A DNA stretch of 64,000 nucleotides, taken from positions 159,269 to 223,268 of the IMG/VR virus record IMGVR_UViG_3300020172_006270; one strand, written 5' to 3'. The position numbers and the translations under genes were made by a program. The notes beneath the pieces are model-generated. The model had not been told where the DNA came from. It was given only the letters and a program-made list of their open reading frames with translations, and searched no databases. Within the stretch, counting starts at the first letter, position 1. Each line of letters begins with the position of its first letter. Below are positions 7,919 through 52,489 of this stretch, piece after piece.

Positions 7919-8743
7919 ATGCACAAAATATTGTTCAGCATCGTGCTAACCCTTTGTACTTTTTCCACTCTTGTATTTAGTGAAGAAAGAGACAAAACTC
8001 CAAGGAAGAGACAGGGAACCAATGCAGTTGATAAAAAACTGCACAAACAGTGTATTTACCCAACTGTGAAAATCACAGATGGAGACGAGTCTGGCGGTAG
8101 CGGCGTCGTTGTAAGATCAACCCAAGTCGGGGATAAATGGCACAATACTGTCGTTCTCGCAGCCCATGTTGTTGAAGATGAAGATGTCCTTGAAGTCCAT
8201 GTGGCTGAATACCAGAATTGGTCTGAAATCAAAGACTACAAAAAGCATCGCATGGTGAGCTATGCGATAGACCCAGCCAGAGATTTGGCTGTTGGTTACT
8301 TCGTAAGTGACCAGAAAATGCCAGTGGCAAAACTATGTTTTGAATCAAAACTTTACATAAACACTAAGGTATTCCATTGCGGATATGCCTTATTGGACGA
8401 TGTTAGAATTGACTATGGGCAAGTCACACAGCCTAAAACTCTTCTCCCTAAAGGGTTTCAGGGCTTGATTCGAGCCAATTGCTTTGCCTTTATGGGTGAT
8501 TCAGGCGGTCCATTGTTTTTGGAGGACAATTACCAAGTAATTGGAATTTGTGTCGGCATCCGTTCTCACAGGCACACATTGCTTTCTAATGTGTCTTATT
8601 ATCGTCCTATCTCGGACCTCAAAACTTGGGACGCAGAGCTAAATAATGCTCTTGAATCGGTATATACGGAGTCGGCGGCGTTGCCTTTACTTCCCTTTGT
8701 GAAGTTAAAACTGAAAGAATACGAATACCAGTTGCCAGAATAG
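7919..8743 (+). CDS. Secreted trypsin-like (S1) serine protease (start revised to 7919)
   Basis: Signal-peptide-like N-terminus; triad motifs LAAHVV, RDLA, GDSGGPL. Confidence 0.85.
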   Translation: MHKILFSIVLTLCTFSTLVFSEERDKTPRKRQGTNAVDKKLHKQCIYPTVKITDGDESGGSGVVVRSTQVGDKWHNTVVLAAHVVEDEDVLEVHVAEYQNWSEIKDYKKHRMVSYAIDPARDLAVGYFVSDQKMPVAKLCFESKLYINTKVFHCGYALLDDVRIDYGQVTQPKTLLPKGFQGLIRANCFAFMGDSGGPLFLEDNYQVIGICVGIRSHRHTLLSNVSYYRPISDLKTWDAELNNALESVYTESAALPLLPFVKLKLKEYEYQLPE

Positions 8744-8756
8744 TATGAGGAACTAA

Positions 8757-10298
8757 ATGAGAACATTTACTGAAAGCCTACAAGTCACCACCAATCTCAG
8801 AATGGCCAAAGAATCATTCATTCTGATGTCCGAGCGTGGAGTTGACCCTAATGATTTTGTCGAGTGGTACACAACCGATGGAATCGGCATACAAGACCAG
8901 GGCTTGCTTGTAGAAGCATCCGAAGAATGGTTAGAAGGCCAAATCGCCAACTGGTTTAGAGACTATGCTGGTCAAAAGGGATTAGGCAAAGCTACCAATG
9001 CACTCGCCACAGGAATTGGTGGTGCTGCTGGTGCTGGCTTAGAAACGGCTAAAGGACTCGGTGGTGCCGCAGTTGATAATGCAACTGCTGCTGCCAATAG
9101 AGTTGGTGGGGCATTCAAGGCTGTAACAGGTTGGGGCAATAATCCCGCTCCTGCTTCTCCCGCAGGAGGCTCTGGCACTCCTGGTGGCAATCCCGGTGCT
9201 GCTCAACCACAAGCACAAGCACAAGCACAAGCACAAGCACAACCTCAAGCTCCTGAGCCTGCTTATGCACAACATGCCAAGAATGCGGCGACCGCAGTTG
9301 ACGCACTTTCTAAGCGTATGTCTAAGTCTAAATCGTTGATGGAAAAACTTGGCGGTCCATCTTTCCAAGCGGTAGTTGTTAATTTACTGAATATGCTCAA
9401 GAATCCATCTAATATGGTTCAAGCTGCTCCACAAGCAACTCCACAAGCACCAGCAAGTTCTAGTGCTGACACACCATCTTTTGAGTCAACTGGCTTCGGC
9501 AATTTCACTCGCAAGATTAGACTTCATAATGAAATCAAGACTGGTCTGCGAACTCTTCAACAACATAACATTGATCCTGTCAAGTTTGTTGATTGGTATA
9601 TCGAAGAAGGACAATACCTCAATGAAGGTATGTTTGATGGGGTAAAAGACTGGTTTGGTCGTCAATGGGCTAATGCTAAGGGTGCGTGGGGTCAATGGGG
9701 CAAGGCTGGTGACGAATATCAGGCCCAGAAAGATCAGGGTCGTGATAACGACGCTATTCAGCAAGCAATGCACGCCTTGGGCGAACTTGAAAAGGGAATG
9801 GGAGGCAGTCAGCCAGCAGAAGATTTTGCTGCTGTATTGAAGCAAGTTCAAGCAGGCTTGAATCAAGCATCACAGGCTCCGGCTGCTCCTGAATCACCAG
9901 CCGCCACTCCTGAAGCTGCTCCTGAAGCTGCTCCTGAAGCTGCTCCTGAATCACCAGCCGCCACTCCTGAAACACCTGCTCCATTTGATCCACTACAGTC
10001 ATACATGAAAGAATTGTTGAATGTCTCTAGTGCTGATCCTAAGACCATTCAATCCGAAGTACCAAAGATTATGGACTTTGCCAAGAAAGCAGGAGTCGAT
10101 CAAAACCAATTGTTGTCTCAACTGAAGGCACAGGGAATTGATCTCAAGAAATTGGGATTACCAGAACCAACTTACACTCCACCTTCAGAAGAAGAGTGGA
10201 TGAATGCAGTTCACGGTGGCGCAAACACACCGAGCTTTGAGAATAGAGTTCGTAGTGGAATGCCATTGTTCTTTGAGTATCTTAAACGGCGTGCTTAA
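8757..10298 (+). CDS. Large Ala/Pro/Gln-rich protein with internal duplication, putative internal head protein
   Basis: Repeated (V/I)DPxxFV(E/D)WY module; LVE/LNE/FE sites; QA and PEAA repeats. Confidence 0.7.
   Translation: MRTFTESLQVTTNLRMAKESFILMSERGVDPNDFVEWYTTDGIGIQDQGLLVEASEEWLEGQIANWFRDYAGQKGLGKATNALATGIGGAAGAGLETAKGLGGAAVDNATAAANRVGGAFKAVTGWGNNPAPASPAGGSGTPGGNPGAAQPQAQAQAQAQAQPQAPEPAYAQHAKNAATAVDALSKRMSKSKSLMEKLGGPSFQAVVVNLLNMLKNPSNMVQAAPQATPQAPASSSADTPSFESTGFGNFTRKIRLHNEIKTGLRTLQQHNIDPVKFVDWYIEEGQYLNEGMFDGVKDWFGRQWANAKGAWGQWGKAGDEYQAQKDQGRDNDAIQQAMHALGELEKGMGGSQPAEDFAAVLKQVQAGLNQASQAPAAPESPAATPEAAPEAAPEAAPESPAATPETPAPFDPLQSYMKELLNVSSADPKTIQSEVPKIMDFAKKAGVDQNQLLSQLKAQGIDLKKLGLPEPTYTPPSEEEWMNAVHGGANTPSFENRVRSGMPLFFEYLKRRA
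9209..9242 (+). repeat. (CAAGCA)n microsatellite encoding QAQAQA
   Basis: Tandem hexamer visible in sequence. Confidence 0.85.
9887..9972 (+). repeat. Direct repeats encoding PESPAAT / PEAA
   Basis: gaatcaccagccgccactcctgaa twice, flanking repeated gctgctcctgaa. Confidence 0.85.
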
Positions 10299-11541
10299 TG
10301 ATTTCGATGGCCTCGTCTACGTCGGCCATTGAGAATATCAAATGTGGTCTTAATCGAATTGACCGTTCTCCGCAAGGCAGGACGGTCATTCTTTTTAGTA
10401 GGTTATCTAAGACCGCATTGCGTGCTTCAGGCGTCTCTAAGTCAAACGCCAGCATCAATCCCTTGCCACGAACATTAGTGATGCGTGGAACCGTGAGAAG
10501 CTGCTTCAAGAAGTAGTCGCCTACTATGGCGACCCGATTCAGAATGTCGTCTTCCTTCATGATCTGAGCTATGTGCGTGAATCGGATCATGTCAATAATG
10601 TTGCCGCCCCACGTCGAGTTGATACGACTGGACTGCTTGAATACATTATCGGGAACTTCATCAATACGGGTGGTAGAAGCGAAACCACAGACCTGCGCTT
10701 TCTTCCCGAACGCTATCATATCTGGCCGCAGCCCGGCATGATGTTCGTAGGCCCATGTTGTCCCGGTCAAACCTACGCCGGTTTGAACTTCATCAAGTAT
10801 GAGCATAGCTTCATACTCAAAGGCCATTTTACGCAGGGCTGCAAAGTATTCGGAAGAAAAGTGGTTATCACCCCCTTCGCCTTGAATGGTTTCCAGAATA
10901 ATTGCGGCCACACGGTTTGTCTTGAGAGCGTCTTCTGCTTGTCGCAGCGAGAGTTCTTCGACCACCGTGGTTTCGCTTTCCACCAACGGGAAGTGTATCT
11001 TTGGATTCTTTATTCTGCTCCAATTGAATTTGGGGAACAAGGCAGTCTTATTTGCGAATGTATTGGTTAAAGAGAGTGTGTATCCGCTACGACCGTGGAA
11101 TGCTTGTTCCAGGTGTACGACATCTAGCGAATTAGCGTCGGCTTCGCTGAGGCCGAGTTTCTTCATCTTCCAATCAAATGCTGCTTTCAGGGCATTCTCT
11201 ACGCCCAGGGTGCCGCCTTCGACAAAGAAGAAATGATTGAAGTCTGGTGCAATACCTGCAAACGTATGGACGAACTCAGCCAATGGAACGCTGTAGTAGT
11301 CTGAGTTGGCAATTTTGTGGACAGCATACAGATTGATGCTTTCCATTTTTTCTTTTAGTTTGGGATGGTTCCATCCCAGGGGCATACTTGCGAATTGCGA
11401 GGAGCAATCAAGAAAAGGTTGTCCGGTTTTGGCGTCAACCAAGTGGGTGCCGAAACTTTTTTCAAAATCAATGACAATAGGCTCACCATCGCCGATGGTG
11501 TGTCTTTTCATGACATCATGTACTTGGTCCGGTCTAAACAT
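10282..11541 (-). CDS. lat: L-lysine 6-aminotransferase (class III PLP aminotransferase)
   Basis: VENALKAAFDWK, AFHGRSGYTLSLTNT, ETIQGEGGDNHF, DEVQTG, FGKK, RINSTWGG. Confidence 0.9.
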   Translation of the reverse strand: MFRPDQVHDVMKRHTIGDGEPIVIDFEKSFGTHLVDAKTGQPFLDCSSQFASMPLGWNHPKLKEKMESINLYAVHKIANSDYYSVPLAEFVHTFAGIAPDFNHFFFVEGGTLGVENALKAAFDWKMKKLGLSEADANSLDVVHLEQAFHGRSGYTLSLTNTFANKTALFPKFNWSRIKNPKIHFPLVESETTVVEELSLRQAEDALKTNRVAAIILETIQGEGGDNHFSSEYFAALRKMAFEYEAMLILDEVQTGVGLTGTTWAYEHHAGLRPDMIAFGKKAQVCGFASTTRIDEVPDNVFKQSSRINSTWGGNIIDMIRFTHIAQIMKEDDILNRVAIVGDYFLKQLLTVPRITNVRGKGLMLAFDLETPEARNAVLDNLLKRMTVLPCGERSIRLRPHLIFSMADVDEAIEIIKHAV

Positions 11542-14590: not shown

Positions 14591-15310
14591 ATGTATGATG
14601 CGGTCATTATTTCTGATTTACACCTTGGCAGCACGATTTGTCAAGCAAAGCAAATTTTGAAGTTTTTGCATCTGATAGAAGAGGATCAGAGCTTCACACA
14701 GAGATTGATCCTCAATGGTGACGTTTTTGATTCATGGGACTTCCGGCGATTATGCAAGAATCAATGGAAGGTATTGTCAAAGCTAAGAAAACTTTCCGAT
14801 GAAATTCAAATCATTTGGATCAACGGCAATCACGATGGTCCAGCGGAGATTATTTCTCAGCTTTTAGGCATTGAGGTTGTTGAAGAACTTATATTTGAAA
14901 GTGGAGACAAAAAAGTATTGGCCTTGCATGGTCATATTTTTGATGACTTCATTAGTGATTACCCTGTGCTTACTTGTTTGGCCGATCAGATTTATCGCTG
15001 GCTTCAAAAGATTCATATCTATTGGGCCAGAAGTGCAAAGAAGTGCAGCAAGACATTTCTTCGTTGCTCCGATAAGATTGAACGAGATGCAAAGAAATAT
15101 GCTATTGCAAAAAAATGTCAAATAGTGTGTTGTGGTCATACGCATTTAGAAATAGAGCATCCAGGTGAAATAGGTTATTTCAATAGTGGATGCTGGACAG
15201 AACTGCCTTGTACTTATTTGATCGTTTCCAATGGAGATGTGTTTGTACACAAATTTTATGATGAGCAAGCAAATAATCATAGCGACGGATGCGTGGGAGC
15301 CGCAGCTTAA
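14591..15310 (+). CDS. Metallophosphoesterase, LpxH2/PlcP-like
   Basis: ISDLHLG, LNGDVFD, GNHD, LHGH, CGHTH, NSGCW. Confidence 0.85.
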   Translation: MYDAVIISDLHLGSTICQAKQILKFLHLIEEDQSFTQRLILNGDVFDSWDFRRLCKNQWKVLSKLRKLSDEIQIIWINGNHDGPAEIISQLLGIEVVEELIFESGDKKVLALHGHIFDDFISDYPVLTCLADQIYRWLQKIHIYWARSAKKCSKTFLRCSDKIERDAKKYAIAKKCQIVCCGHTHLEIEHPGEIGYFNSGCWTELPCTYLIVSNGDVFVHKFYDEQANNHSDGCVGAAA

Positions 15311-21492: not shown

Positions 21493-21499
21493 GTTGACA

Positions 21500-22877: not shown

Positions 22878-22907
22878 AAAAGCCAGGGGAAAAATCCCCT
22901 GGCTTTT
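22878..22907. terminator. Bidirectional intrinsic terminator
   Basis: aaaagccagggg/cccctggctttt. Confidence 0.85.
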
Positions 22908-22932
22908 GCCTTTTCACGCATTCGCAGAAAAA

Positions 22933-23478: not shown

Positions 23479-23536
23479 TGCAAGACTCCTTCAGAGAATC
23501 GGAAATTCCAGTCGGTCGTTCCAACTGATCCCCCAC

Positions 23537-23564
23537 AGTTTACTCGATCTCGGTCGGAAGTCAA
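23537..23564 (-). promoter_or_regulatory. Sigma70-like promoter TTGACT-N16-TAAACT
   Basis: Same spacing as 4478 and 18363 promoters. Confidence 0.55.
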
Positions 23565-27508: not shown

Positions 27509-28405
27509 TTATTGAGCTTGTTTCAAACCCGACAGGATCAACAGTTGATCCACGTCATTGTTTGTGGGTGCAGCGTATTCCGAAATCACTACACCATCAT
27601 CGGATGTCTTACCTCTCCCCGTTACATTCGTTGCATTCGTTGTTCTTTCTTTCTGCTCGTTGACAACCTCGGTCTTCTTCACAGACTTGATGGCCTTACG
27701 GCTCTCTGTGATAAGTTCCTGAGACTGACGCACGGCTTCGTTCAACTTGGTGTTTTCTGTGGAGAGACGGATGTTGCGTGCTTCCATAATGCGAAGCTGG
27801 CCCTTCATCTCTTCTACACTCTTGTTGACTTCTTCCAGCTTGCTGGAAGAAACTGATGCGAAATCATCGTCCGACAAGTAGTTGCTGGTCAGATCAATGA
27901 TCTTGTCCAGAGTAACCTTGTGTTCGGCCATACGAGGATCGTTTAATACGTCCCGCTTGGCTTGTTCATAGATTTCCTGGCCCTTGAATTGCAAGAACTG
28001 GTCAACCTTATCGACAATGTATTCCTTCATCTCAGCCAGTTTCTTGTCGTACTCTTCGTACATCTCGACTTCTAGCTGCTGATTCTTGTCTCGCTCGCCC
28101 TTGAGCATCTGGTATGCTTCTTCATACCCTTCCTCAAGTGCTGCCTTGTACTCTTCACCCTGAAGCTCAAGACGGTTACGAAGATCGCCAATAATAGCGT
28201 ATGCTTCTTCGTAGCCTTTCTCTGCTGTCTTTTCAGCGTTCGCCAACTCGCTAGTAAGCTCGGCGTAGGCTTCTTCAAGTTTCTGATTGTACTCAGTTTC
28301 GAGATTTACCTTAGCCTGCTCTAGCATGTCCTTGACGGCGGCTGCGACTTCGTTAATCTCAGATTCAGGTAGGAGCTTCTTCAGTGCTTCTGTAATCTTA
28401 TCCAT
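27509..28405 (-). CDS. Prohead scaffold/core protein, gp22-like
   Basis: Acidic coiled coil between protease and MCP. Confidence 0.75.
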   Translation of the reverse strand: MDKITEALKKLLPESEINEVAAAVKDMLEQAKVNLETEYNQKLEEAYAELTSELANAEKTAEKGYEEAYAIIGDLRNRLELQGEEYKAALEEGYEEAYQMLKGERDKNQQLEVEMYEEYDKKLAEMKEYIVDKVDQFLQFKGQEIYEQAKRDVLNDPRMAEHKVTLDKIIDLTSNYLSDDDFASVSSSKLEEVNKSVEEMKGQLRIMEARNIRLSTENTKLNEAVRQSQELITESRKAIKSVKKTEVVNEQKERTTNATNVTGRGKTSDDGVVISEYAAPTNNDVDQLLILSGLKQAQ

Positions 28406-29088
28406 TAGCCTAACCTCGCTTTGATATTGCTAGTTTGTTGTTCAATGATCCCGCCCAAGCAAGCAATAAGTGCTTCTTTATTTACATTATGTATGCGGCT
28501 ACATTCATTTTTCGCCACATTTTTGTGAATTTCAGAACTTGGTGCTGGTGTGTAACTTTCTTTCTTGCCAACGACCTTCTCCTGAAAGGCGTTGTAGGTG
28601 CTAGGATCAGCAACAGCATCGAAAGTAATTAGCTTGTAGCTTTCGCCAATAACTAAAATTCCATTCTCATCACTGCGACCGTTGCCAACGCCTCGGCTGC
28701 TGATTCCAACTCTCACCCCGTCAGACAAAAGACTTCGTAGTATTCTGCCGTGCGGTGTATTAAGAATCTCTCCTTCACCCATGAGGTTGTTTCCCTCCCA
28801 CCACAATTTAGTGATGACGTGAGAACATTTCTCAAAGTGAATGATCGAATCTGTAGGGTGATCTAACTCTCCCACCAGCCCACGGGCTTCTACGATGGGA
28901 ATCAATTTCTTGACGTTCTCATCGAGAACACCATAGGGGTAAATTCTTTTGTTTTTGTTAACTGCCTCGGCCTCTTGGAACTTGCCCTTGAACTTAGTCA
29001 GCCCCTTATCGGTAGCTGACTCGTTCAAATTCAAGACAAACCCGCCATTGTCACAGCAGTCAACGAATAGACTTAATCTTTCATCCAT
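28405..29088 (-). CDS. gp21: Prohead protease, T4 gp21-like
   Basis: NKNKRIYP, GELDHP, SHVI, TPHG, GISSRGVG, FDAVADPS. Confidence 0.95.
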   Translation of the reverse strand: MDERLSLFVDCCDNGGFVLNLNESATDKGLTKFKGKFQEAEAVNKNKRIYPYGVLDENVKKLIPIVEARGLVGELDHPTDSIIHFEKCSHVITKLWWEGNNLMGEGEILNTPHGRILRSLLSDGVRVGISSRGVGNGRSDENGILVIGESYKLITFDAVADPSTYNAFQEKVVGKKESYTPAPSSEIHKNVAKNECSRIHNVNKEALIACLGGIIEQQTSNIKARLG

Positions 29089-35465: not shown

Positions 35466-36077
35466 ATGAAGAAAATACTTTTCGTTTGCAGCCATCTACA
35501 TTCGGGTTCTTCTGCGTTATGTGACGCATTAAATCACCATCCTCGGATTCAGGGTTACAACTTAGCGGCTCGCAGTCCGTATGTTGGACCACCGAATCTA
35601 TTGACACTCACAGAGCAGCATCATAAGTTAGATAATCGGTCGGCAATTTACATGGATGAATTGCTTCATAATCATCACCTTTCAACGAAGGCAGCTTATA
35701 AAGAGTGTAAGTTCATCTATGTTGTGAGAGAACCTGCTGCTGTTTTGAATTTATTGATCGGTAATGAAAAAATGAAACCGTCCTTCGCCGTTAGGTATTA
35801 CACCTATCGACTCAGACGGTTGTGCGAGATGGCCAAGCGAACGCCTGGGGCTGTATTGTTGACTTGGGACGATTTAGTGGAGAATCGAGGAATTCCGCTG
35901 ATTGAAGATTACTTGAATCTCCGTCAGCCTATTTCCTACGACCCTACATCTTTGGCTCCCTTCAAAAGAACTTATTCTACCGATCTTGTCGGCTTGCAGT
36001 TACGCTCGAAAGTGGAAGATACCTACCAACGATACCTGTATTACCTGAAAAATCAAAATCTTCATTATTGGTCTTAA
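35466..36077 (+). CDS. Sulfotransferase-like P-loop protein
   Basis: HSGSSALCDALNHHP, FIYVVREP, LLTWDDL. Confidence 0.6.
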   Translation: MKKILFVCSHLHSGSSALCDALNHHPRIQGYNLAARSPYVGPPNLLTLTEQHHKLDNRSAIYMDELLHNHHLSTKAAYKECKFIYVVREPAAVLNLLIGNEKMKPSFAVRYYTYRLRRLCEMAKRTPGAVLLTWDDLVENRGIPLIEDYLNLRQPISYDPTSLAPFKRTYSTDLVGLQLRSKVEDTYQRYLYYLKNQNLHYWS

Positions 36078-37044
36078 TTGGCAATACTGGAGCTTCCTTG
36101 ATAAACCACAATACACCAGTCCAAGTTCGAGAGTATTCGCTCACGATTTCCTCTCGTGTAGGGTTTCTTTGGTGTGTTCCAAATTCCATAACAACTGCAA
36201 ATGCACCATTGCGATAATACCAGTCTACTTCGCTGCCATGAATGGGTCGGCCATACATATTGCAGGCACGATCCATTCTGTAGTCACACATCTTTCCCAT
36301 TTGTCCAACGATACGCTGGTAGTCAGCCTCGTTAGGACATTTTTGATTCGTGTCTCCGAACGGAGTTAAAAAGATGCGACCGAAAGTGTGTCCTGAAATG
36401 ACAGCGTTGGGTTTAATCTTTAAGAAGAAATCCTGTAGAGCTTGAATGCTAGGCGTCGATTTGTAAGTGGGACGGGACGGACCAGGGAAGTCACGATTAG
36501 GGTCAACTCCATCAACGTGGCGGCTGTGTGGATAACTGTCAGGAGAAACAACTGGAATGATGTAAATGTCTCTGGACTCAATCAAATCGGTAATTTCTTT
36601 GTTCTTCCCATAGCCAGCCAGGAGATTACCTGCGTAAGCCATGACGCAACCTGTGGACCAAGGTTCATTTCCGTGAATACAACCAGTGATAAGAACTCGT
36701 GGGCGATCTTTTACTTCAATTTTGTTGCATATTCTGATGTAACAAATATCAACGCCTCTTTTTGTTTTGCCATAGAATCCAACATCTGTTAGATCAGGCG
36801 CTTCTTCTTGCCATTTTTGAACTTGGTTTATAACTTCTGAATAGCTTAAATGCGGCGGTACTTGAACAGTAATGTTCGGCAAGCGTGGAGTTTTGGGTGG
36901 CTCAGGAATAACTTCAACAGGCGGTTGAACCTGAGTGATTGGTTGTGTCTGCAATTCACGATTATTGCGTGTTTTGACGTTGAATGCGACAAATAGGGCT
37001 AATGTGAGAACTCCTACGGCCCAACCTAAATTGAATCCTTTCAT
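35977..37044 (-). CDS. Membrane-anchored M14 zinc carboxypeptidase
   Basis: IHGNE, PVVSPD, DPNRDFP, ISGHTF, MEFG; N-terminal TM. Confidence 0.88.
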   Translation of the reverse strand: MKGFNLGWAVGVLTLALFVAFNVKTRNNRELQTQPITQVQPPVEVIPEPPKTPRLPNITVQVPPHLSYSEVINQVQKWQEEAPDLTDVGFYGKTKRGVDICYIRICNKIEVKDRPRVLITGCIHGNEPWSTGCVMAYAGNLLAGYGKNKEITDLIESRDIYIIPVVSPDSYPHSRHVDGVDPNRDFPGPSRPTYKSTPSIQALQDFFLKIKPNAVISGHTFGRIFLTPFGDTNQKCPNEADYQRIVGQMGKMCDYRMDRACNMYGRPIHGSEVDWYYRNGAFAVVMEFGTHQRNPTREEIVSEYSRTWTGVLWFIKEAPVLPIKTNNEDFDFSGNTGIVGRYLPLSSVTASRQDR

Positions 37045-37389: not shown

Positions 37390-38118
37390 TTACTTACTTG
37401 GTTGGAGTATGTAATCTTTTGGATAGACCCCTTGTGGGCCATTTCTATCTACAATTGGAATCTCCGGTACTATTGGTCGGTATTTTTGTGGCACAATGTC
37501 GTTGTCGGCATACACCACACAAATCCACCCATCCCAACGACGGTTAAATTCTTCCATAGTCCAAGTGCGAATCTTGAGCGAACTATCGCTGTTGTTGATG
37601 TACTTGACTATTCCCTTTTGTTCGTCGTAATGCACCAAGGTCATTGCGTGACCTGGGACTGCGAACAAACAACCACGTCTTTCTTGGACAACTGACTTGA
37701 TGATTAAACTACGATCAGACCTACTTGTTGTCTGTTCGTATCTCACCCGTAGTTGTTTTAGTTTAGTGGCGGCACTGCTTGGACTAGCATAGCTTTTGCA
37801 ATCTGCTAAGTCAGTCATGTTGATTAGTTTTGGTTCTTCAGCGTATCGTCCGCAAGTTTCAAGCGAACACCATACACACTGAATTCCCGTCTTGTTGAAG
37901 ACACGATCCTTCATTGGGATCGGCACCATTACATCGGTGAGGTCTTCGTCCGCTTCTCCTTCATACTCAGCTACAGGATTCTGTACTGGAATGCCAGGAT
38001 TTGGATTTGGATATTGATGATTGGTAGTTTGTCCACGCAAAGTGTGTTTTGGAAGCGTGATTGCAACGCTGCTCAAAGCCACAACTGCGCAGGCTAAAAC
38101 CGCAAGCAACTTCTTCAT
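37390..38118 (-). CDS. Secreted papain-fold (C39-like) cysteine peptidase
   Basis: Signal peptide; QCVWCS, GHAMTLV, YINNS; SD AGGAGG. Confidence 0.65.
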   Translation of the reverse strand: MKKLLAVLACAVVALSSVAITLPKHTLRGQTTNHQYPNPNPGIPVQNPVAEYEGEADEDLTDVMVPIPMKDRVFNKTGIQCVWCSLETCGRYAEEPKLINMTDLADCKSYASPSSAATKLKQLRVRYEQTTSRSDRSLIIKSVVQERRGCLFAVPGHAMTLVHYDEQKGIVKYINNSDSSLKIRTWTMEEFNRRWDGWICVVYADNDIVPQKYRPIVPEIPIVDRNGPQGVYPKDYILQPSK

Positions 38119-39136: not shown

Positions 39137-39188
39137 GGGTATTCTCCTTTTTTGATGGTGACGGCAATACATATCATAGGAGGAGCCT

Positions 39189-39620
39189 ATGAAAAAACTA
39201 CTGCTTTTTGCGTCTTTATGTTTACCAATTTTTGCAGGTTGCACCGCAGCCCCATTGCTTATCAGCCCAATTGTGACGGGTGTAATCATGTGGAAAGACG
39301 GTGAAGCTCACAAATATTATAACGAGGAAGCCCATACTCTGTATCGGGCTACGAAAACATCTTTGAAAGAATTGGATCATCCAATTATCAAAGAGGAACC
39401 CTACAGGGACGGCGGCTACTATATCGTTGCTGGTGAAGGTGATAAATTCAAGATCACCATCCGACAAGTAAAGCCGCACATCACTGAGGTCAAAATTCGC
39501 ATAAACTTCATGGGCGACAAGCCTTATGCGGAGTTGGTGTATCGCCAAATTGACTCAAACACCAACACCATCGACTTTGATGACCAAGGTAAACCAACAA
39601 AACGTAAACAAAGACGGTAA
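39189..39620 (+). CDS. Lipoprotein, DUF3568-like
   Basis: Lipobox FAGC; TEVKIRI..GD; SD AGGAGG. Confidence 0.7.
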   Translation: MKKLLLFASLCLPIFAGCTAAPLLISPIVTGVIMWKDGEAHKYYNEEAHTLYRATKTSLKELDHPIIKEEPYRDGGYYIVAGEGDKFKITIRQVKPHITEVKIRINFMGDKPYAELVYRQIDSNTNTIDFDDQGKPTKRKQRR

Positions 39621-39636: not shown

Positions 39637-41373
39637 TTAGCAGACTTTTCTTGACGCACTGCTGCCATATTTATACGTTGTTCTTCCTCCGGCCCTGACA
39701 GTGGTATAACAGCCAACTTTCGGGGCCGGAGTCGTTGGTACAGGGTCACAATCGCATGATCTAGGCTTGCAATTGGCATTGTGGCAGGCAACACAGCCGG
39801 AATTATTGGCTGGCTTCCACGGTTTGCCATATTCTGGGGCATTCGGATCACAATAGTTGGGCTTACCACAGGTGCAAACAATTTGCTTACGCATGAGCTT
39901 GCCATGACGGTTCTCGAACAGAGCGGAATCATGTTCGCCGACCAAGCCGCCATCATTCAATATACGCAGGCAGTTATATGCTGCGTCCAGAATTTCTCCC
40001 TCATGGGATTCCGATACGCCCACCAATTTATCATTGTCGAAATAATATGCCGTTTGATCTGGCACGGTAATTTCCAAGTCGAACAATGGATTCGCATCCA
40101 AAGCCGTCACTGGTCCGAGTTTATCTGACAACTTCATTGTCTTGGTCGTAAGCGTGCGGACAATTTTCATGTCGCCATACGTTTGAACTTCGTGCGGCTT
40201 TTTGATGTCTTTCAAAACGGACTCGACATCGGCATCTTCCAGCATCATTACACGTTGACGTAATATTCCTCTCTGAGAAAATACCTCACGCATAATAGTT
40301 TGATATTTCCCGCCCTCGGCGTGGTCAATTGCCAACATCTGTTGTGCAATGGCGTCGAACAAGCGAACCGTAGTCGGTGCCTGCACAACAGCCTTCAGCA
40401 AATAATTTGCAACAATGTCTCTGGACAATTTCATTCCATCACGAAGAACGTGGCCCTGGTTAATGTGAGCTACGCCAATTCGCACAACGATTTCCCAGAA
40501 GGCTCCAGTGAACACACGGCTAAAGCTGTGCGATTCGCCTAACAGTTGATCGTCTCGACCTTCGCTTGGCAATTTTTCTGGTTCTGTGTAGTTGAATACC
40601 TGGGTCATATCTCGCAAGCAATTTGGCAACTCGCCATTTTTGCCTTCTGTCAGGTGGTGCAATCCCGTTCCCATCTCTGCCGCAAGACGAGTTATGATAT
40701 TTGACTTCATTAAGTCGCCATTGGTTTCAATGATGGCGTGGTCAATTAACTGATCGTACTGTAAAGAAATCAACGCAGCCGTCATGTCGCCGAAGGCTTC
40801 ATGGAAAGCCCAAACCTCGGCAGCTTGAGTGTCCCACCAATCTGGTCGCAGGATGTCTAGGAACGCATGACCGAACTCATGAACAACGACCGGGCGTGCG
40901 TCACAAGCAAAGATGTTTTTGTTTATCTTTGGATCGCCAAAAAAGAAGAATCGTAGTGATCCACGATCATAATAAGCGTTAAGGTCTTTTCCAGCACGAG
41001 GCATCAGGATCAACGATTGTACCGCTGCCCAATTTCTGATTTGCTTTGGAGATTTGCTTGCCATATACACGAGAGCATCGTGTACCATAATCTTTAACGC
41101 CAGAGCTTGCTGCTGAAGACTTCCCAACGGATAGCCGCCACCCATTTCACCAATGGATCGCATGGCCAACATTGTGTCTGCTGGCTCCAGCACATTGACG
41201 ATCATGTTTGGGTAGGTTGGATCACTCAGGTAAACTTTAGTATTCGGGTCTGTTGGACGAGCCACTGGCACAGGACGTGGTTTTCTGTTGACAATAATTG
41301 CCTGAGCCGTCACTTCGTCTGATGTTTTTCCTAGACTTTTGATCCAGTTGATTATTCCTTTAAGCATCTTCAT
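39637..41373 (-). CDS. Gluzincin metalloprotease (M4/M36-like) with Cys-rich tail
   Basis: NAYY, VVHEFGH, AFHEAFGD, ESHSFS. Confidence 0.82.
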   Translation of the reverse strand: MKMLKGIINWIKSLGKTSDEVTAQAIIVNRKPRPVPVARPTDPNTKVYLSDPTYPNMIVNVLEPADTMLAMRSIGEMGGGYPLGSLQQQALALKIMVHDALVYMASKSPKQIRNWAAVQSLILMPRAGKDLNAYYDRGSLRFFFFGDPKINKNIFACDARPVVVHEFGHAFLDILRPDWWDTQAAEVWAFHEAFGDMTAALISLQYDQLIDHAIIETNGDLMKSNIITRLAAEMGTGLHHLTEGKNGELPNCLRDMTQVFNYTEPEKLPSEGRDDQLLGESHSFSRVFTGAFWEIVVRIGVAHINQGHVLRDGMKLSRDIVANYLLKAVVQAPTTVRLFDAIAQQMLAIDHAEGGKYQTIMREVFSQRGILRQRVMMLEDADVESVLKDIKKPHEVQTYGDMKIVRTLTTKTMKLSDKLGPVTALDANPLFDLEITVPDQTAYYFDNDKLVGVSESHEGEILDAAYNCLRILNDGGLVGEHDSALFENRHGKLMRKQIVCTCGKPNYCDPNAPEYGKPWKPANNSGCVACHNANCKPRSCDCDPVPTTPAPKVGCYTTVRAGGRTTYKYGSSASRKVC

Positions 41374-45647: not shown

Positions 45648-46775
45648 TTAATCCTTGTGAAAATGTACATCTTTGTGTCCGTGATCGTGCGTGTATTCCA
45701 TCTCCCGGAATCCACCATAATTGAACGATGGCTTGGTATCTGAATTGACGACTTTCCACGTCAATTCAAATCCATACTTTGCTACCTTCTCAATGCCAGA
45801 GAAATTGATTTTATCTGCTGTATCTCTCGGCGTGTGATAATTGTCGTGCATTCCAGTGTGCAAGAACGCAATTGGAACCTTCTTATTGTAGAAGCAAGCG
45901 TGATCGCTGCCACCACTGCTACGGCCTGTAATGCTCTTAGCAAATGAGTATTTTCCACTCAATTCCCCAATGATGCTCGACACGTCAGGAGAGCTTTCCC
46001 CTTCGTTGAAGGCAACGGCAGTGCGAGCTTTGCCCAAATATCCAACCATATCCATATTGAGCATGAATATATGCTTGCGAATATTGGGGTCGCCTTTCGG
46101 GAAAATAGGGTTGTCGCAATAATATCGTGACCCAATTAACCCCATTTCCTCGGCACTAAAAGACATAAAGACCACGGTTCTTTTGTTCTGACCACGCAGA
46201 GACGCAAAGGTTTTGGCTATTTGAAGCAAAGCCACCGTCCCTGAAGCGTTATCGTCAGCCCCAGGGTGAATTTTCCCGCCACCCGACCGGCTCATGGCTG
46301 GTCCCCAGCCAATGTGGTCCATGTGTGCGCCAACAACTACGATCTCATCTTTTAATTCGGTGCCTTCAATCCAGGCAATGATATTCTGCGTGAAATCATC
46401 ACCAGTTTCATTGTTCGGCCCAGGATTCATTCTTTTGATATTGAACTTTTGATATGCCGTATCGAGGCCGAAACTTTCATATATCTTTTTCAGATAATCG
46501 GCAGCGACAACATTTCCTTTTTTGCCCGACATTCGACCTTCAAGCTCGGCAGAACACAAATATTCTAAATGTTTTTGCAATTCGCTTTCAGATATATCTG
46601 CGATGGCTTCATCATAAGTCTTTTTGCGTGGCGGGTCCACGTCAGGTGGCGGCAAAGGCTCGACCGGAGGAACGAATTCTTCTTGAACAATGGGCGGCGG
46701 GACATCACGTTTGCTGATATACACAGCAAGCAAAATGATTCCCAGCGACAGTACAACGAGAGGGAGCTTACGCAT
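45648..46775 (-). CDS. Membrane-anchored M28 peptidase (start revised to 46775)
   Basis: GAHMDH, GADDNASG, AEEMGLIGS, NMDM, SDH, YHTPRD. Confidence 0.92.
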   Translation of the reverse strand: MRKLPLVVLSLGIILLAVYISKRDVPPPIVQEEFVPPVEPLPPPDVDPPRKKTYDEAIADISESELQKHLEYLCSAELEGRMSGKKGNVVAADYLKKIYESFGLDTAYQKFNIKRMNPGPNNETGDDFTQNIIAWIEGTELKDEIVVVGAHMDHIGWGPAMSRSGGGKIHPGADDNASGTVALLQIAKTFASLRGQNKRTVVFMSFSAEEMGLIGSRYYCDNPIFPKGDPNIRKHIFMLNMDMVGYLGKARTAVAFNEGESSPDVSSIIGELSGKYSFAKSITGRSSGGSDHACFYNKKVPIAFLHTGMHDNYHTPRDTADKINFSGIEKVAKYGFELTWKVVNSDTKPSFNYGGFREMEYTHDHGHKDVHFHKD

Positions 46776-46869: not shown

Positions 46870-48741
46870 ATGGATCAAGCCGTATTTTTCAAGAGCAAAC
46901 GTGACTCTGTTTGGCGGGGCAAACACAAAACCCTGGAAGAATTCTATAAGAGTGGTGGGAAGATACTTAAACGAGGGGAGGGCAAAAAGAGTCGTCTCCA
47001 ATATGATCCCGACTATTACACTCTCGACAAGTATGAACTTGAAATTGATCCCGATGAGCCGCTGGAAAACTTCGATACTTACGATTCGGCCCGTCGTCAA
47101 AAAGAGATCATCAAGTGCTGCAACAGCTTCGCTTATTTCTGCCACAAATATGTGAAGATTCTTCACCCGATGGATGGTTTGATTCCTTTCGTATTATACA
47201 ACTATCAGCGAAAGGTTATCCAAGAATACGAAAACCACCGATTTAACATCATCAGTAAGTTTCGTCAAGGGGGACTGACGACAGTAACTTTGCTGTGGGG
47301 CATGTGGCGCTGCATGTTCCAACTCGACCAACAGATCATGATCTTGGGTCGAACTGACCGTGACGCCACAGATATTGGCATGATGGTGGATCGTTCCATT
47401 GAGAACTTCCCAGATTGGTTGAAGCCAATAAAAGATGGTAAGTGGAATGACCACATGAAGATGTTCACGGACACCGGGTCGGCCTTAAAATTTCACTCTC
47501 CTGAAGCTGCTCGTGGTAAGTCCGTTACATTCTTGATTGTGGACGAAGCTGCGTTCATTGATGACATGGACAAGCACTGGAAAGCTATGTGGCCTATCCT
47601 TTCGACGGGTGGTGGTTGCACCCTTGTATCCACGGTTAATGGTCTGGGCAACTGGTATGAACAAACCTACCACGAAGCACAAGAAAAGCAAAACCGATTC
47701 AATATCATCGACTTGGATTATTGGGAACATCCCGACTACAACGACGATGAATGGGTTAAAGAACAAAAGGCACAACTCGGCGAGAAAGGCTTCTTGCAGG
47801 AAGTGTTGCGTGAGTTCCTTGGCTCCGGTGACACTTACTTCTCTGCTAAGGTCATCACACAACTCACAGAGCAAACCAGAAACAATTACCCTAGCCGCAA
47901 GTTATTCCCGAAATGGGTCAACAAGGCAGGCCGTATTGCTGTGTTGGAAAGTGAAGACCACAACAAGGGTGCTATGTGGGTCTGGAAAGAACCAATTGAT
48001 GGCCATGAATATATCATTGGCGCTGACGCCTCTGAAGGCCAAGGCAACAATAACGACAATTGCTGTTTTCAGGTAATTGATACAGCAACTTTGGAACAAG
48101 TGGCCGAGTTTTACTCCAATATCATTGTGCCTCACGAATTCGCTCAGGTGCTTAATGAAGTGGGCATTTATTACAACAATGCTCTGATTGTTGTCGAAAA
48201 CATGGGTCCAGGCGGGGCTGTTCTAAGCAACCTGCAATTCACCTTGTTTTACGAGAACCTTTATTACGAAAGCCTTAAATCGGCCAACGTAAAACCGGGC
48301 ATCAAAATTGGTCAAGTAAACCGATCTCTATATTTGGAATCTCTCCAAAATCGGCTATTGAACCAAACTGTGCGTATTAACAGTATGCGATTTGTTATGG
48401 AACTTCAGACTTTTGAGTACAACCCTGTCACTCGCAAGGCTGAAGCCCAAAAAGGCAAGCACGACGACGCTATTATGTCTATGTGTATGGCCCTTTATGT
48501 TCGTGATTCCATGTTGCGAGACATACCTATGGGGGCAGAGATTCCGAAAGAAGTAACGGCCACGCTAAAAGCTCAGGTATATGAAGAAATCAAACGTGAA
48601 TTGATGGAAGGAAGACCAGAAGATTTCCTTATGGATGATGAAATAGACCTTTTAGCGCCCGACAAAGATACTGTCATGCCCGGTGTTATTTTCAACATTG
48701 AGCGTCGGAACGATAGACTGCTTAAAGAATTTGGGTGGTAA
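46870..48741 (+). CDS. gp17: Terminase large subunit, T4 gp17-like
   Basis: LYNYQ, KFRQGGLTT, IVDEAAF, VSTVNG, GADASEG, VENMGPG, HDDAIM. Confidence 0.95.
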   Translation: MDQAVFFKSKRDSVWRGKHKTLEEFYKSGGKILKRGEGKKSRLQYDPDYYTLDKYELEIDPDEPLENFDTYDSARRQKEIIKCCNSFAYFCHKYVKILHPMDGLIPFVLYNYQRKVIQEYENHRFNIISKFRQGGLTTVTLLWGMWRCMFQLDQQIMILGRTDRDATDIGMMVDRSIENFPDWLKPIKDGKWNDHMKMFTDTGSALKFHSPEAARGKSVTFLIVDEAAFIDDMDKHWKAMWPILSTGGGCTLVSTVNGLGNWYEQTYHEAQEKQNRFNIIDLDYWEHPDYNDDEWVKEQKAQLGEKGFLQEVLREFLGSGDTYFSAKVITQLTEQTRNNYPSRKLFPKWVNKAGRIAVLESEDHNKGAMWVWKEPIDGHEYIIGADASEGQGNNNDNCCFQVIDTATLEQVAEFYSNIIVPHEFAQVLNEVGIYYNNALIVVENMGPGGAVLSNLQFTLFYENLYYESLKSANVKPGIKIGQVNRSLYLESLQNRLLNQTVRINSMRFVMELQTFEYNPVTRKAEAQKGKHDDAIMSMCMALYVRDSMLRDIPMGAEIPKEVTATLKAQVYEEIKRELMEGRPEDFLMDDEIDLLAPDKDTVMPGVIFNIERRNDRLLKEFGW

Positions 48742-51087: not shown

Positions 51088-51533
51088 CTCATGGTGTCTT
51101 GAAGCAATTCGTCAGGCTTAATTTCAACAAAATGCACCACATTAAATTTGTGAATGCCTTGTTGAACTTTATTGTATTGCCTGAACTCCAACCATTCAGA
51201 ACCGCCGTCTTTCACATCCAACAGTCTTTCCGATGTGCCTAGCTGAACTGCTACAACATCCTGGACTTCTTCAGGCACATTGTCGCCACCAAGCTCCAAT
51301 TTCTGCGGCAGATTGATGTTGTAGCCTTCTTCCATAGGCATGATTGCCTTGTTGATAGCTTCGTTCGTCAATTTGTACTTACAGAACATTTCTTTAGCAG
51401 GCTCGGAAGTGGTGCCACGATGGAACCATACCGGCACACTCACGCCCATAACTTCAAGAGATTCGCCAGAATGCAGCTTATAGCGTTGCTCTCGGTTCAA
51501 ATAGATGTAATGCGAAATAGTCAATGTTGCCAT
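51084..51533 (-). CDS. Hypothetical protein
   Basis: SD GAGG; TATATA box. Confidence 0.7.
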   Translation of the reverse strand: MATLTISHYIYLNREQRYKLHSGESLEVMGVSVPVWFHRGTTSEPAKEMFCKYKLTNEAINKAIMPMEEGYNINLPQKLELGGDNVPEEVQDVVAVQLGTSERLLDVKDGGSEWLEFRQYNKVQQGIHKFNVVHFVEIKPDELLQDTMS

Positions 51534-51589
51534 TCTTTGTTCCTCACGAATATATAGATGGTAGGAGTCTTCATGCTAAGGAGTAGCAA

Positions 51590-52489
51590 ATGTTCAAATT
51601 ATCTTCTATTCTTGTCTTGTTGGTTAGTTTCCTGGCCCCGATTGCCAGCGCCGAAACGCCCTCTGTGTATTCATATGATCCATTAGACAATATGCCGATT
51701 ATGGAGCGTCGGCCTACTGGCTTTGCAGGCATGGCTCCAATCGAGCAACGTGGTCCAGAGTTCCGTAAGTTTCTCGCTGCATCTGTCAAAATCAGCGTGG
51801 GCGGCGGTTCTGGTTCTGGAACCATTGTTTATTACGATGCAGCTAAAAATCTCGCTTACGTCGCATCTTGCGGGCATATGTGGAGTCAAGGAACCATGTC
51901 CGTAGAAGAAGGCAAGCGTCGAAATATGACTTGCAAAGTAATCACTTGGTATCATAACGAAAAGAAGCTGGACTCTCCCAAGAGTTACAATGCCAATGTA
52001 ATATTCTATAGCTATATCAGCGGTCAGGATACGTCACTTGTGACTTTTACTCCAGATTGGCAACCTGAGTATTTCCCCATTGCTCCTGTGAACTACGAGT
52101 ACAAGGCTGGTCGCCATGCTCACTCATTGGGATGTGATGGCGGCAATGAGGTCGCACACTATGACATTGAAATAATTGGACTTGGTGGCGGTGATTTGGT
52201 TACGAATCAAAACAGCCCACGCCCAGGACGTTCTGGTGGTGGGCTGATGGATGACGACGGATATTACATCGCAACTTGCTGGGGAACTCAATATCGTGAT
52301 GGAAGCGGCAAGGGATATTTTACGCCTCTATCTGCCATTCATGGATATTGGAACAAGCAAAGTGGATATGAGTTCTTGTTGAACCAGAAGCCGGGCGGCA
52401 CAGCAGCACGCCAGATTCCGGTCAAAGACCGCAGTGGTCCTCAAGGCACATATAAGCCAGAATATATTTTGCTTCCAGGTGGACGTTAA
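51590..52489 (+). CDS. Secreted trypsin-like (S1) serine protease
   Basis: Signal peptide ending ASA; GSGT, SCGH, DTSL, PGRSGGGL. Confidence 0.85.
   Translation: MFKLSSILVLLVSFLAPIASAETPSVYSYDPLDNMPIMERRPTGFAGMAPIEQRGPEFRKFLAASVKISVGGGSGSGTIVYYDAAKNLAYVASCGHMWSQGTMSVEEGKRRNMTCKVITWYHNEKKLDSPKSYNANVIFYSYISGQDTSLVTFTPDWQPEYFPIAPVNYEYKAGRHAHSLGCDGGNEVAHYDIEIIGLGGGDLVTNQNSPRPGRSGGGLMDDDGYYIATCWGTQYRDGSGKGYFTPLSAIHGYWNKQSGYEFLLNQKPGGTAARQIPVKDRSGPQGTYKPEYILLPGGR

What the first reader, a model, noticed from the sequence alone, without database searches (positions are those of the whole stretch)
7919..52489. Six non-virion proteases from five families, five with export signals
S1 (7919+, 51590+), M14 (37044-), C39-like (38118-), M4/M36-like (41373-) and M28 (46775-). 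All but the M4/M36-like enzyme have a signal peptide or TM anchor, several with Pro-rich stalks. Many other exported or anchored proteins accompany them (7585, 16476, 22501, 22933, 24706, 39189, 42403, 56369). Inference: an extracytoplasmic proteolytic programme, such as lysis of a protein-rich envelope, receptor destruction for superinfection exclusion, or nutrient scavenging.
Basis: partly seen in the sequence, partly recalled or inferred. Interest (0 to 1): 0.68.

Follow-up and report, generated by a model that had tools for sequence, protein, structure and literature searches.

The report
Exported protease set in huge phage
A freshwater giant T4-like phage carries six intact protease genes besides its capsid-maturation protease. 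Five have export or membrane-anchor signals, and most recur in related 0.5-0.6 Mb phages, which points to protein digestion in the host cell envelope for a purpose not yet tested.

Summary
All six genes lie at the stated coordinates, and every family call is supported.

- **Family calls:** S1/Trypsin_2 (7919+, 51590+), M14 and M28 rest on Pfam, family alignments and motifs. The C39-like and M4/M36-like calls rest on AlphaFold models matched to solved structures.
- **Active sites:** catalytic residues are intact. In the three families I aligned, they are kept in at least 116 of 120 homologues.
- **Export signals:** five of six proteins have N-terminal hydrophobic segments. Three look like cleavable signal peptides and two are membrane anchors followed by Pro-rich stalks. 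The thermolysin-like enzyme has none (0 of 120 homologues).
- **Genome:** the window is the last 64 kb of a 223-kb contig, about 46% complete, of a T4-like huge phage from freshwater.
- **Conservation:** the genes are not sporadic additions. Five of six recur in a 546-kb relative whose terminase is only 53% identical. M14, the C39-like gene and the HEXXH gene keep their place between portal and terminase in a 603-kb relative. M28 sits beside the terminase gene in two other relatives.
- **New detail:** the C39-like and second S1 families share a conserved 25-residue C-terminal tail of unknown role.

The purpose is untested. Endopeptidases combined with amino- and carboxypeptidases favour bulk digestion to amino acids. 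Lysis or receptor destruction remain open. No RNA data were available.

The parts
7919..8743 (+). S1 (PA clan, Trypsin_2) serine endopeptidase no. 1, 274 aa. Signal peptide MHKILFSIVLTLCTFSTLVFS. Candidate triad H83, D122, S195 (GDSGG).
   Evidence: Pfam PF13365 E 4.5e-13 and PF00089 E 2.7e-5. Motifs read. A 43%-identical homologue with a signal peptide lies in LR756511.1. Nearest Atlas clusters are all viral Trypsin_2.
51590..52489 (+). S1-like serine endopeptidase no. 2, 299 aa. Signal peptide ending ASA|E. Invariant H96, D147, S215. Conserved C-terminal tail (about residues 271-296).
   Evidence: Pfam Trypsin_2 E 3.5e-4, below cut-off. At least 559 homologues, many with PF13365. Alignment A3 invariants. 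Leader in 112/118 and tail in 114/120 homologues.
35977..37044 (-). M14 zinc carboxypeptidase, 355 aa. N-terminal membrane anchor (residues 3-21) plus Pro-rich stalk (residues 25-70). H123, E126, R184, H219, E287 present.
   Evidence: Pfam PF00246 E 1.8e-27. Nearest solved structures are carboxypeptidase A4/A2/T. 78% identical and syntenic in a 603-kb relative; 53% identical in a 546-kb relative, with anchor and stalk kept.
37390..38118 (-). C39-like papain-fold cysteine peptidase, 242 aa. Signal peptide (possible lipobox VLAC). Invariant Q80-C81, H157, D178. Same C-terminal tail as S1 no. 2 (about residues 215-240).
   Evidence: No sequence-family hit. At least 237 homologues. Alignment A1. 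AF2 model pLDDT 85.8. Foldseek PDB top hits are C39 domains 3zua, PCAT1, LahT, ComA, TMt about 0.7. Atlas fold search.
39637..41373 (-). Thermolysin/fungalysin-like (M4/M36-like gluzincin) metallopeptidase, 578 aa, no export signal. Invariant H165, E166, H169, E192, D196. Invariant Cys-rich C-terminal about 80 aa.
   Evidence: Motifs. At least 409 full-length homologues. Alignment A2. AF2 pLDDT 80. Foldseek PDB top hits 4k90/7z6t (M36), thermolysin, ProA, LasB, aureolysin, prob 1.0. 0/120 homologues have a hydrophobic N-terminus. Present in all three large relatives checked (L001, LR756511.1, G001:C90).
45648..46775 (-). M28 aminopeptidase, 375 aa. N-terminal membrane anchor (residues 3-21) plus Pro-rich stalk (32% Pro). 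Di-zinc ligands H151, D174, E209/E210, D242, H292 present.
   Evidence: Pfam PF04389 E 3e-40. Nearest solved structure is Vibrio/Aeromonas leucyl aminopeptidase, ligand columns aligned. 66% and 53% identical copies sit beside TerL in two other relatives.
28405..29088 (-). gp21/S77-type prohead maturation protease. This is the virion protease, not part of the six.
   Evidence: phrog_207 E 3.6e-48. PF03420 Peptidase_S77 on the L001 orthologue.
39189..39620 (+). DUF3568 lipoprotein (lipobox FAGC) inside the protease cluster.
   Evidence: Pfam PF12092 E 2.4e-11. Sequence read. Conserved in L001.
7585..7890 (-). Small anchored protein: N-terminal TM plus Pro/Glu-rich stalk. It lies divergent from S1 no. 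1.
6227..7492 (-). Glutamate dehydrogenase, an amino-acid nitrogen metabolism gene close to S1 no. 1.
   Evidence: Pfam PF00208 / PF02812.
10282..11541 (-). Class-III aminotransferase.
   Evidence: Pfam PF00202 E 1.4e-76.

Best explanation
The six genes encode catalytically competent peptidases that belong to the long-term gene stock of a clade of freshwater T4-like huge phages.

Five are sent across the host inner membrane. Two S1 endopeptidases and a C39-like cysteine peptidase carry cleavable-type signal peptides. An M14 carboxypeptidase and an M28 aminopeptidase stay tethered by an N-terminal anchor and a Pro-rich stalk. The architecture suggests a diderm host, so their workplace would be the periplasm or envelope.

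The set combines endopeptidases with both kinds of exopeptidase. The most likely job is therefore stepwise bulk digestion of envelope or periplasmic proteins and peptides down to amino acids during infection. That would feed the very large protein demand of such a phage. Weakening or remodelling of the envelope would be a by-product.

The thermolysin-like enzyme has no export signal. It acts in the cytoplasm, or only after lysis.

Shown: folds and families, intact active sites, conserved leader segments, conservation and synteny.

Inferred: export, topology, substrates and purpose.
For: Families and folds.

Active-site residues are invariant in alignments A1-A3 and kept in at least 116/120 homologues. 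M14 and M28 ligands are present.

Hydrophobic leaders occur in 115/120 C39-like and 112/118 S1 no. 2 homologues although the leader sequence itself is not conserved. None occurs in 120 HEXXH homologues.

The anchor plus Pro-rich stalk is kept in M14 and M28 orthologues.

Conservation:
- M14, C39-like and HEXXH are syntenic at 78-81% identity in a 603-kb relative.
- M28, HEXXH, C39-like, S1 no. 2 and M14 are present in a 546-kb relative with TerL 53% identical. There M28 is more conserved (66%) than TerL.

Endo plus amino plus carboxy complement: nearest solved enzymes are leucyl aminopeptidase and carboxypeptidase A/T.

Glutamate dehydrogenase and an aminotransferase lie within 3 kb of S1 no. 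1.

Other proteins with a TM plus Pro-rich stalk, and a lipoprotein, in the same window suggest a diderm envelope as target.

Background: exo-acting M28 versus endo-acting M4/M36 classes in nitrogen mineralisation (10.1101/2022.03.11.484050). Huge phages encode many envelope-directed proteins (10.64898/2026.10.24.761521).
Against: - No trained signal-peptide or topology predictor was available.
- The M14 anchor has more basic residues after the hydrophobic segment than before it. By the positive-inside rule this could put the enzyme in the cytoplasm.
- No peptide or amino-acid transporter was seen in the window.
- Glutamate dehydrogenase does not co-occur with the proteases. It was not found on the 546-kb phage contig that has five of them, nor in LR756511.1.
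- Four of the genes sit in the head/packaging block, which fits a late, egress-related role at least as well.
- There are no expression data.
- The host is unknown.
Confidence: 0.4

Rival explanations
1. Targeted envelope remodelling rather than bulk digestion. The exported enzymes would cut specific host envelope proteins late in infection: outer-membrane tethers, an S-layer or surface receptors. This would help lysis and egress, or destroy receptors for superinfection exclusion or to stop progeny sticking to debris.
For: M14, C39-like, HEXXH and M28 lie between portal and TerL, on the strand of the head genes. They are accompanied by a lipoprotein and by anchored proteins with Pro-rich stalks. 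No T4-lysozyme, SLT, Amidase_2 or M23 gene was found in the 223-kb contig. None of the first three was found in the complete-looking 595-kb relative.
Against: Exopeptidases of the leucyl-aminopeptidase and carboxypeptidase A/T types are poorly suited to cutting folded envelope proteins. The contig is only about 46% complete, so the absence of an endolysin means little. LR756511.1, which lacks four of the five exported enzymes, must still lyse its host.
Confidence: 0.25
2. Processing enzymes for the phage's own exported proteins. The C39-like and S1 enzymes would mature or activate other phage-encoded secreted proteins, or each other. The shared C-terminal tail would be a pro-segment or docking tag.
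For: C39 enzymes classically remove leader peptides (fold matches to PCAT1, ComA, LahT). The two tail-bearing families co-occur, are next to each other in the 546-kb relative, and are both missing from LR756511.1. Many phage-encoded exported proteins are present.
Against: No double-glycine leader substrates were identified. M14 and M28 exopeptidases are not explained. The complex prediction of the two proteins gave no verdict, which is not evidence either way.
Confidence: 0.12
3. The M14 enzyme, and possibly others, acts on peptidoglycan stem peptides. This would be an anchored or signal-arrest-release-type lysis or wall-remodelling enzyme rather than a protein-degrading one.
For: From general knowledge, the M14 family includes murein-peptide amidases (MpaA, gamma-D-Glu-DAP peptidase I). 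The anchor is moderately Gly/Ala-rich, and the stalk of about 35 residues could reach the wall. Neighbouring Atlas clusters partly carry DUF2817 or AstE_AspA domains.
Against: The nearest solved relatives are protein carboxypeptidases A4/A2/T, not MpaA-type enzymes. No wall-binding domain was seen.
Confidence: 0.1
4. The hydrophobic N-termini are not export signals. The enzymes would stay in the cytoplasm or be packed into virions, acting on host cytoplasmic proteins or being ejected.
For: Export was not predicted with a trained tool. The charge flanks of the M14 and M28 anchors are ambiguous. The genes sit in the structural block.
Against: Leaders with n-h-c layout and AXA-type sites occur (ASA|E in S1 no. 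2). They are conserved as a feature in more than 94% of homologues despite sequence drift. The families concerned are typically extracytoplasmic. No T4-type capsid-targeting sequence was seen at the HEXXH N-terminus, by my own reading of the sequence.
Confidence: 0.08

Closest known systems
Secreted bacterial M28 leucyl aminopeptidases (Vibrio/Aeromonas proteolytica AAP; Legionella LapA)
   Same: Same fold and all five di-zinc ligand positions. Extracytoplasmic.
   Different: About 30-35% identity to cellular enzymes. It is tethered by an N-terminal anchor and Pro-rich stalk rather than secreted with a propeptide. It is phage-encoded and sits beside the terminase gene.
M14A/B carboxypeptidases (carboxypeptidase A4/A2, carboxypeptidase T)
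   Same: The HxxE, NR, H and E motifs and the Pfam domain over its full length.
   Different: No pro-domain. It has a membrane anchor plus stalk. Specificity is unknown. Nearest clusters are viral.
C39 bacteriocin-processing peptidase domains (PCAT1, ComA, LahT) and free-standing C39-like enzymes
   Same: Papain-like fold with Cys, His and Asp in the C39 order. TM-score by target about 0.7.
   Different: Not fused to an ABC transporter. It has its own signal peptide, a Gln directly before the Cys, no Pfam C39 match, and a conserved 25-residue C-terminal tail shared with an S1 protease.
M4 thermolysin / M36 fungalysin
   Same: HEXXH plus a downstream Glu in an EAxxD motif. Fold matches at probability 1.0.
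   Different: No signal peptide or FTP/PepSY propeptide and no Pfam M4/M36 match. It has extra beta-rich and Cys-rich C-terminal parts. Only one significant look-alike exists among known viral protein models.
HtrA/DegP-type Trypsin_2 proteases
   Same: Chymotrypsin fold with a His-Asp-Ser triad. Exported.
   Different: No PDZ domains. They are small single-domain proteins. S1 no. 2 carries the C-terminal tail.
Envelope-directed proteins of huge phages (sortase B, PspA, outer-membrane proteins; bioRxiv 10.64898/2026.10.24.761521)
   Same: The same theme: large-genome phages encode proteins aimed at the host envelope. That work notes peptidases as a widespread auxiliary class.
   Different: A search of that paper's main text for peptidase, protease, periplasm and secretion terms found no account of an exported multi-family peptidase set or of the shared tail.

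Membership tests
S1 / PA-clan serine peptidase (Trypsin_2), gene 7919-8743 | Profile match above the curated cut-off | tested here: met
   PF13365 50.6 bits against a cut-off of 27.6.
S1 / PA-clan serine peptidase (Trypsin_2), gene 7919-8743 | His-Asp-Ser triad in that order, with a GDSGG-type serine motif | tested here: met
   AAH83, D122-LAV and GDS195GG, read from the sequence. No structure-based check was made.
S1 / PA-clan serine peptidase, gene 51590-52489 | Profile match above the curated cut-off | tested here: inconclusive
   The protein itself scores 21.8 bits against a cut-off of 27.6. Many close homologues carry PF13365 in precomputed tables.
S1 / PA-clan serine peptidase, gene 51590-52489 | Conserved His-Asp-Ser triad | tested here: met
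   H96, D147 and S215 are invariant in 27 sequences. GRSGG and CGH occur in 120/120 homologues.
M14 zinc carboxypeptidase | Profile match and zinc/catalytic residues (HxxE, H, catalytic E, substrate-binding NR) | tested here: met
   PF00246 97 bits. H123, E126, N183-R184, H219 and E287 aligned to carboxypeptidase A4.
M28 aminopeptidase | Profile match and five co-catalytic zinc ligands (H, D, E, D, H) plus the general-base Glu | tested here: met
   PF04389 138 bits. H151, D174, E209/E210, D242 and H292 aligned to AAP.
C39 cysteine peptidase | Sequence-profile membership (PF03412 / PF13529) | tested here: not met
   No Pfam, NCBIfam or PHROG hit at E <= 0.1. It is therefore 'C39-like', not a filed member.
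C39 cysteine peptidase | Papain-like fold with the Cys...His...Asp order and an oxyanion Gln | tested here: met
   Foldseek top hits are C39 domains. Q80, C81, H157 and D178 are invariant.
C39 cysteine peptidase | Cleavage after double-glycine leaders | not testable with these tools
   This needs biochemistry. No candidate substrates were found.
M4 / M36 gluzincin | Sequence-profile membership | tested here: not met
   No Pfam or PDB sequence hit.
M4 / M36 gluzincin | HEXXH plus a third zinc ligand Glu about 20 residues downstream, in a thermolysin-type two-lobe fold | tested here: met
   H165, E166, H169, E192 and D196 are invariant. The fold matches M36 and M4 enzymes at probability 1.0, TMt 0.5-0.6.
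Sec-exported / signal-anchored protein (five of six) | N-terminal basic n-region, hydrophobic h-region, small residues at -3/-1 or an uncleaved anchor | tested here: inconclusive
   A hydropathy heuristic and reading of the sequences support it, and the feature is conserved in families. No SignalP/DeepTMHMM run was possible. The charge flanks of M14 are ambiguous.

The most novel reading that the evidence does not exclude
The 25-residue C-terminal tail, (I/L)P(I/V)xD(R/K)N..QG.Y...YILxP, is carried by two unrelated exported proteases, the C39-like and S1 no. 2 families. In the 546-kb relative both tails carry a further C-terminal extension. The tail could be a phage-specific docking or sorting tag. 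It would bring both enzymes to one envelope target or partner, forming a phage-built periplasmic degradation machine. The anchored amino- and carboxypeptidases would finish the digestion.
Probability: 0.15. Interest if true: 0.75.

Novelty: new variant of a known kind. Interest (0 to 1): 0.5.

Why it matters
Phages are known to recycle host DNA and to carry metabolic genes. A conserved, multi-family set of exported peptidases would add protein digestion in the host envelope to what very large phages do.

Two of the families have no database model, so they give new entry points for enzymology.

The set is a tractable hypothesis for three questions about 0.5-0.6 Mb phages: how they meet their amino-acid demand, how they leave their hosts, and how they prevent re-adsorption.

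The shared C-terminal tail is a short, testable candidate for a new targeting signal.

Tried and rejected
- **T4 late promoter:** TATAAATA is not enriched (1 match, 1.0 expected), so timing could not be assigned. A TATATA box lies upstream of four of the protease genes, but its timing class is unknown.
- **Host inference:**
  - The closest cellular M28 genes are only 33-36% identical and spread over several phyla.
  - Glutamate dehydrogenase is 40-43% identical to genes in genomes of three different phyla.
  - Bins that hold related phage contigs disagree: Bacteriovoracaceae, Chloracidobacterium, Neisseriaceae.
  - Only weak hints remain: Shine-Dalgarno use, a GT9 heptosyltransferase-like gene, and a Bdellovibrionota-labelled M14 cluster.
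- **Complex prediction** of C39-like with S1 no. 2: no verdict. This counts neither for nor against binding.
- **Tail search:** an HMM of the tail found no third carrier in the 223-kb contig or in the fetched loci.
- **Cultured phages:** tblastn against 50,697 phage records found 0-8 records per protease. Among them the only syntenic relative is LR756511.1, which has just S1 no. 1 and HEXXH.
- **Endolysin families** PF00959, PF01464, PF01510 and PF01551 were not found in the contig. This is uninformative at 46% completeness.
- **Expression:** no RNA run holds the stretch.
- **The large representative-protein search** was not used. The word search and the folds left no family open.
- **Capsid targeting of HEXXH:** by my own reading, its N-terminus does not resemble a T4 capsid-targeting sequence, so I rejected that idea.

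Full report
**What the window is**

The window is the last 64 kb of a single 223,268-bp contig. CheckV rates the contig about 46% complete. It carries four T4-type head and packaging genes:
- gp23 major capsid protein, 26028-27464(-).
- gp21/S77 prohead protease, 28405-29088(-).
- gp20 portal with an intein, 32835-35378(-).
- Large terminase, 46870-48741(+).

The nearest deposited phage is the uncultured 595-kb LR756511.1, with capsid protein 80% identical. Closer relatives are a 602,679-bp ENA contig (terminase 95%, portal 93%) and many metagenomic contigs. A 546-kb contig binned into a Bacteriovoracaceae MAG (terminase 53%) is a more distant relative. DNA like the window occurs in freshwater, lake and sediment metagenomes from 16 studies. 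No RNA run holds it.

**The observation**

All six ORFs are there, with good Shine-Dalgarno sequences for five of them.

Pfam places three above the curated cut-offs: 7919-8743 in Trypsin_2, 35977-37044 in M14 and 45648-46775 in M28.

The second S1 candidate (51590-52489) scores below the cut-off by itself. It belongs to a family of at least 559 proteins, many flagged PF13365. H96, D147 and S215 (in NSPRPGRSGGGL) are invariant in that family.

- *C39-like protein.* It has no sequence-family hit. Its AlphaFold model (pLDDT 85.8) matches C39 peptidase domains first: 3zua, PCAT1, LahT and ComA, with TM by target about 0.7. It also matches bacterial Peptidase_C39 clusters in the ESM Atlas. Q80-C81, H157 and D178 are invariant in 36 sequences.
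- *HEXXH protein.* Its model (pLDDT 80) matches M36 fungalysins and M4 thermolysin-type enzymes first, at probability 1.0. H165, E166, H169, E192 and D196 are invariant.

The M14 and M28 zinc and catalytic residues align with carboxypeptidase A4 and with Vibrio/Aeromonas leucyl aminopeptidase.

**Export signals**

Five of the six have an N-terminal hydrophobic segment, against about 7 of 81 other ORFs in the window (Fisher p = 1.2e-4).
- S1 no. 1, S1 no. 2 and the C39-like protein have the short basic-hydrophobic-small layout of cleavable signal peptides. An example is the ASA|E site in S1 no. 2.
- M14 and M28 have a segment of about 19 residues followed by a stalk of 22% and 32% proline.

The feature is conserved even though the sequence is not. 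It is present in 115/120 C39-like and 112/118 S1 no. 2 homologues, and in the M14, M28 and S1 no. 1 orthologues I read. It is absent from all 120 HEXXH homologues.

I had no trained predictor, so export is an inference. The M14 anchor has more basic residues behind the hydrophobic segment than before it, which leaves its orientation open.

- 39189 is a DUF3568 lipoprotein with a FAGC lipobox.
- 22933(-) has an ASA|Q signal.
- 7585 and 22501 have a TM plus a Pro/Glu-rich stalk.
- 42403 has a C-terminal TM.
- 56369 has a signal peptide.

**Conservation**

These genes are rare in deposited phages: 0 to 8 of 50,697 records per protein. They are common in metagenomes, with at least 237, 409 and 559 homologues for the C39-like, HEXXH and S1 no. 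2 families, mostly 45-90% identical and full length.

| Relative | What it carries |
|---|---|
| 603-kb ENA contig | M14 (78%), C39-like (78%) and HEXXH (81%), in the same order between portal and terminase. No M28 beside the terminase. |
| 546-kb contig and a 10-kb contig | M28 directly beside the terminase, at 66% and 53% identity. |
| 546-kb contig, further genes | HEXXH (38%), C39-like (54%) and S1 no. 2 (59%) within 6 kb of each other, and M14 (53%) elsewhere. |
| LR756511.1 | Only HEXXH and S1 no. 1. |

Matching contig lengths in the three homologue tables suggest that many more contigs carry two or three of the families together. This is an inference.

None of the six has a paralogue in the other 159 kb of the contig.

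**A new detail**

The C39-like and S1 no. 2 families end in the same tail of about 25 residues, (I/L)P(I/V)xD(R/K)N..QG.Y...YILxP. It is present in 109/120 and 114/120 homologues and in no HEXXH homologue. An HMM of the tail finds no third carrier in the contig. The two genes are close neighbours in the 546-kb relative, and both are missing from LR756511.1. A complex prediction of the two proteins gave no verdict.

**What it most likely does**

This much is shown: active-site-intact peptidases of five families, a conserved leader or anchor on five of them, and long residence in this phage lineage.

The purpose is inferred. The set pairs endopeptidases (two S1, C39-like, thermolysin-like) with an aminopeptidase and a carboxypeptidase of the protein-digesting kind. 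That combination is what organisms use to take proteins down to amino acids (background: 10.1101/2022.03.11.484050). Glutamate dehydrogenase and an aminotransferase lie beside S1 no. 1. I therefore favour bulk digestion of envelope or periplasmic proteins and peptides, with amino-acid salvage, at confidence 0.4.

Three points count against this reading:
- No transporter was seen.
- Glutamate dehydrogenase does not travel with the proteases in relatives.
- Four of the genes sit in the head/packaging block, which suits a late, egress-linked role.

Four rivals remain open: targeted envelope remodelling for lysis or receptor destruction, processing of the phage's own exported proteins, a peptidoglycan-peptide role for M14, and non-export.

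No T4-lysozyme, SLT, Amidase_2 or M23 gene is in the contig, but more than half of the genome is missing.

**Comparison with what is known, and novelty**

Each enzyme belongs to, or resembles, a known family. The M14, M28 and S1 proteins are new members of their families. The C39-like and thermolysin-like proteins fail the sequence-profile test but meet the fold and active-site tests, so they are new families within known clans.

A recent preprint shows that huge phages encode many envelope-directed proteins and mentions peptidases as a common auxiliary class (10.64898/2026.10.24.761521). A term search of its main text found no account of an exported multi-family peptidase set or of the tail.

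I rate this a new variant of a known kind, with interest 0.5.

Noticed in passing
window 32835-35378 (-): The T4-type portal gene carries an intein (PF14890, residues 113-326). The same arrangement is present in the 603-kb relative.
   Followed up: partly
window 60203-61207 (-): A full-length match to the Volactin actin-like family (PF25216, E 4e-69). It is 66% identical in LR756511.1. This is an actin-like cytoskeletal protein in a huge phage.
   Followed up: no
whole contig; in the window at 37080, 41398, 41963, 46805, 51551, 58688, 13963, 22479: The hexamer TATATA occurs only 33 times in 223 kb. Most copies lie within 100 nt upstream of an ORF start, usually 10-80 nt. They include M14, HEXXH, M28/TerL and S1 no. 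2. No -35-like box accompanies it. It is a candidate phage promoter of unknown timing class. The T4 late motif TATAAATA is not enriched.
   Followed up: partly
window 6227-7492 (-), 10282-11541 (-), 55431-56372 (+), 20614-21531 (-), 45216-45647 (-): Metabolic or auxiliary genes: glutamate dehydrogenase, class-III aminotransferase, GlpX-type fructose-1,6-bisphosphatase, an inosine-uridine nucleoside hydrolase-like protein and a ferritin/Dps-like protein.
   Followed up: partly
window 38777-39289 (-): The ORF ends in a run of about 100 residues of almost pure Asp/Glu. Its long form overlaps the DUF3568 gene, and the orthologue in the 603-kb relative is shorter (114 aa), so the true start is probably further downstream.
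   Followed up: no
window 61477-62463 (-) and 15231-16274 (+): A GT9 heptosyltransferase-like gene and a GT4 glycosyltransferase gene. With the enriched AAGGAG ribosome-binding sites, they hint at a diderm host that uses Shine-Dalgarno sequences, which would argue against Bacteroidota.
   Followed up: partly
window 39637-41373 (-), residues 497-578: The thermolysin-like protein ends in a block with about ten invariant cysteines (CxC, CxxC, CxC spacings). AlphaFold models it poorly. It could be a zinc-binding or a disulfide-rich module.
   Followed up: no
G001:C90 (546-kb contig), loci L003, L014-L016, L019: A contig of huge-phage size with terminase, M28, HEXXH, C39-like, S1 no. 2 and M14 is filed inside a Bacteriovoracaceae MAG. 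Other relatives are filed in Chloracidobacterium and Neisseriaceae MAGs. This is most likely mis-binning, though a host link to Bdellovibrionota cannot be excluded.
   Followed up: partly
window 22906-23805 (+) versus 22933-23478 (-): Two long ORFs overlap on opposite strands. The minus-strand one begins with a clear signal peptide (ASA|Q) and is Gly/Ser/Tyr-rich, so it is the more credible gene.
   Followed up: no
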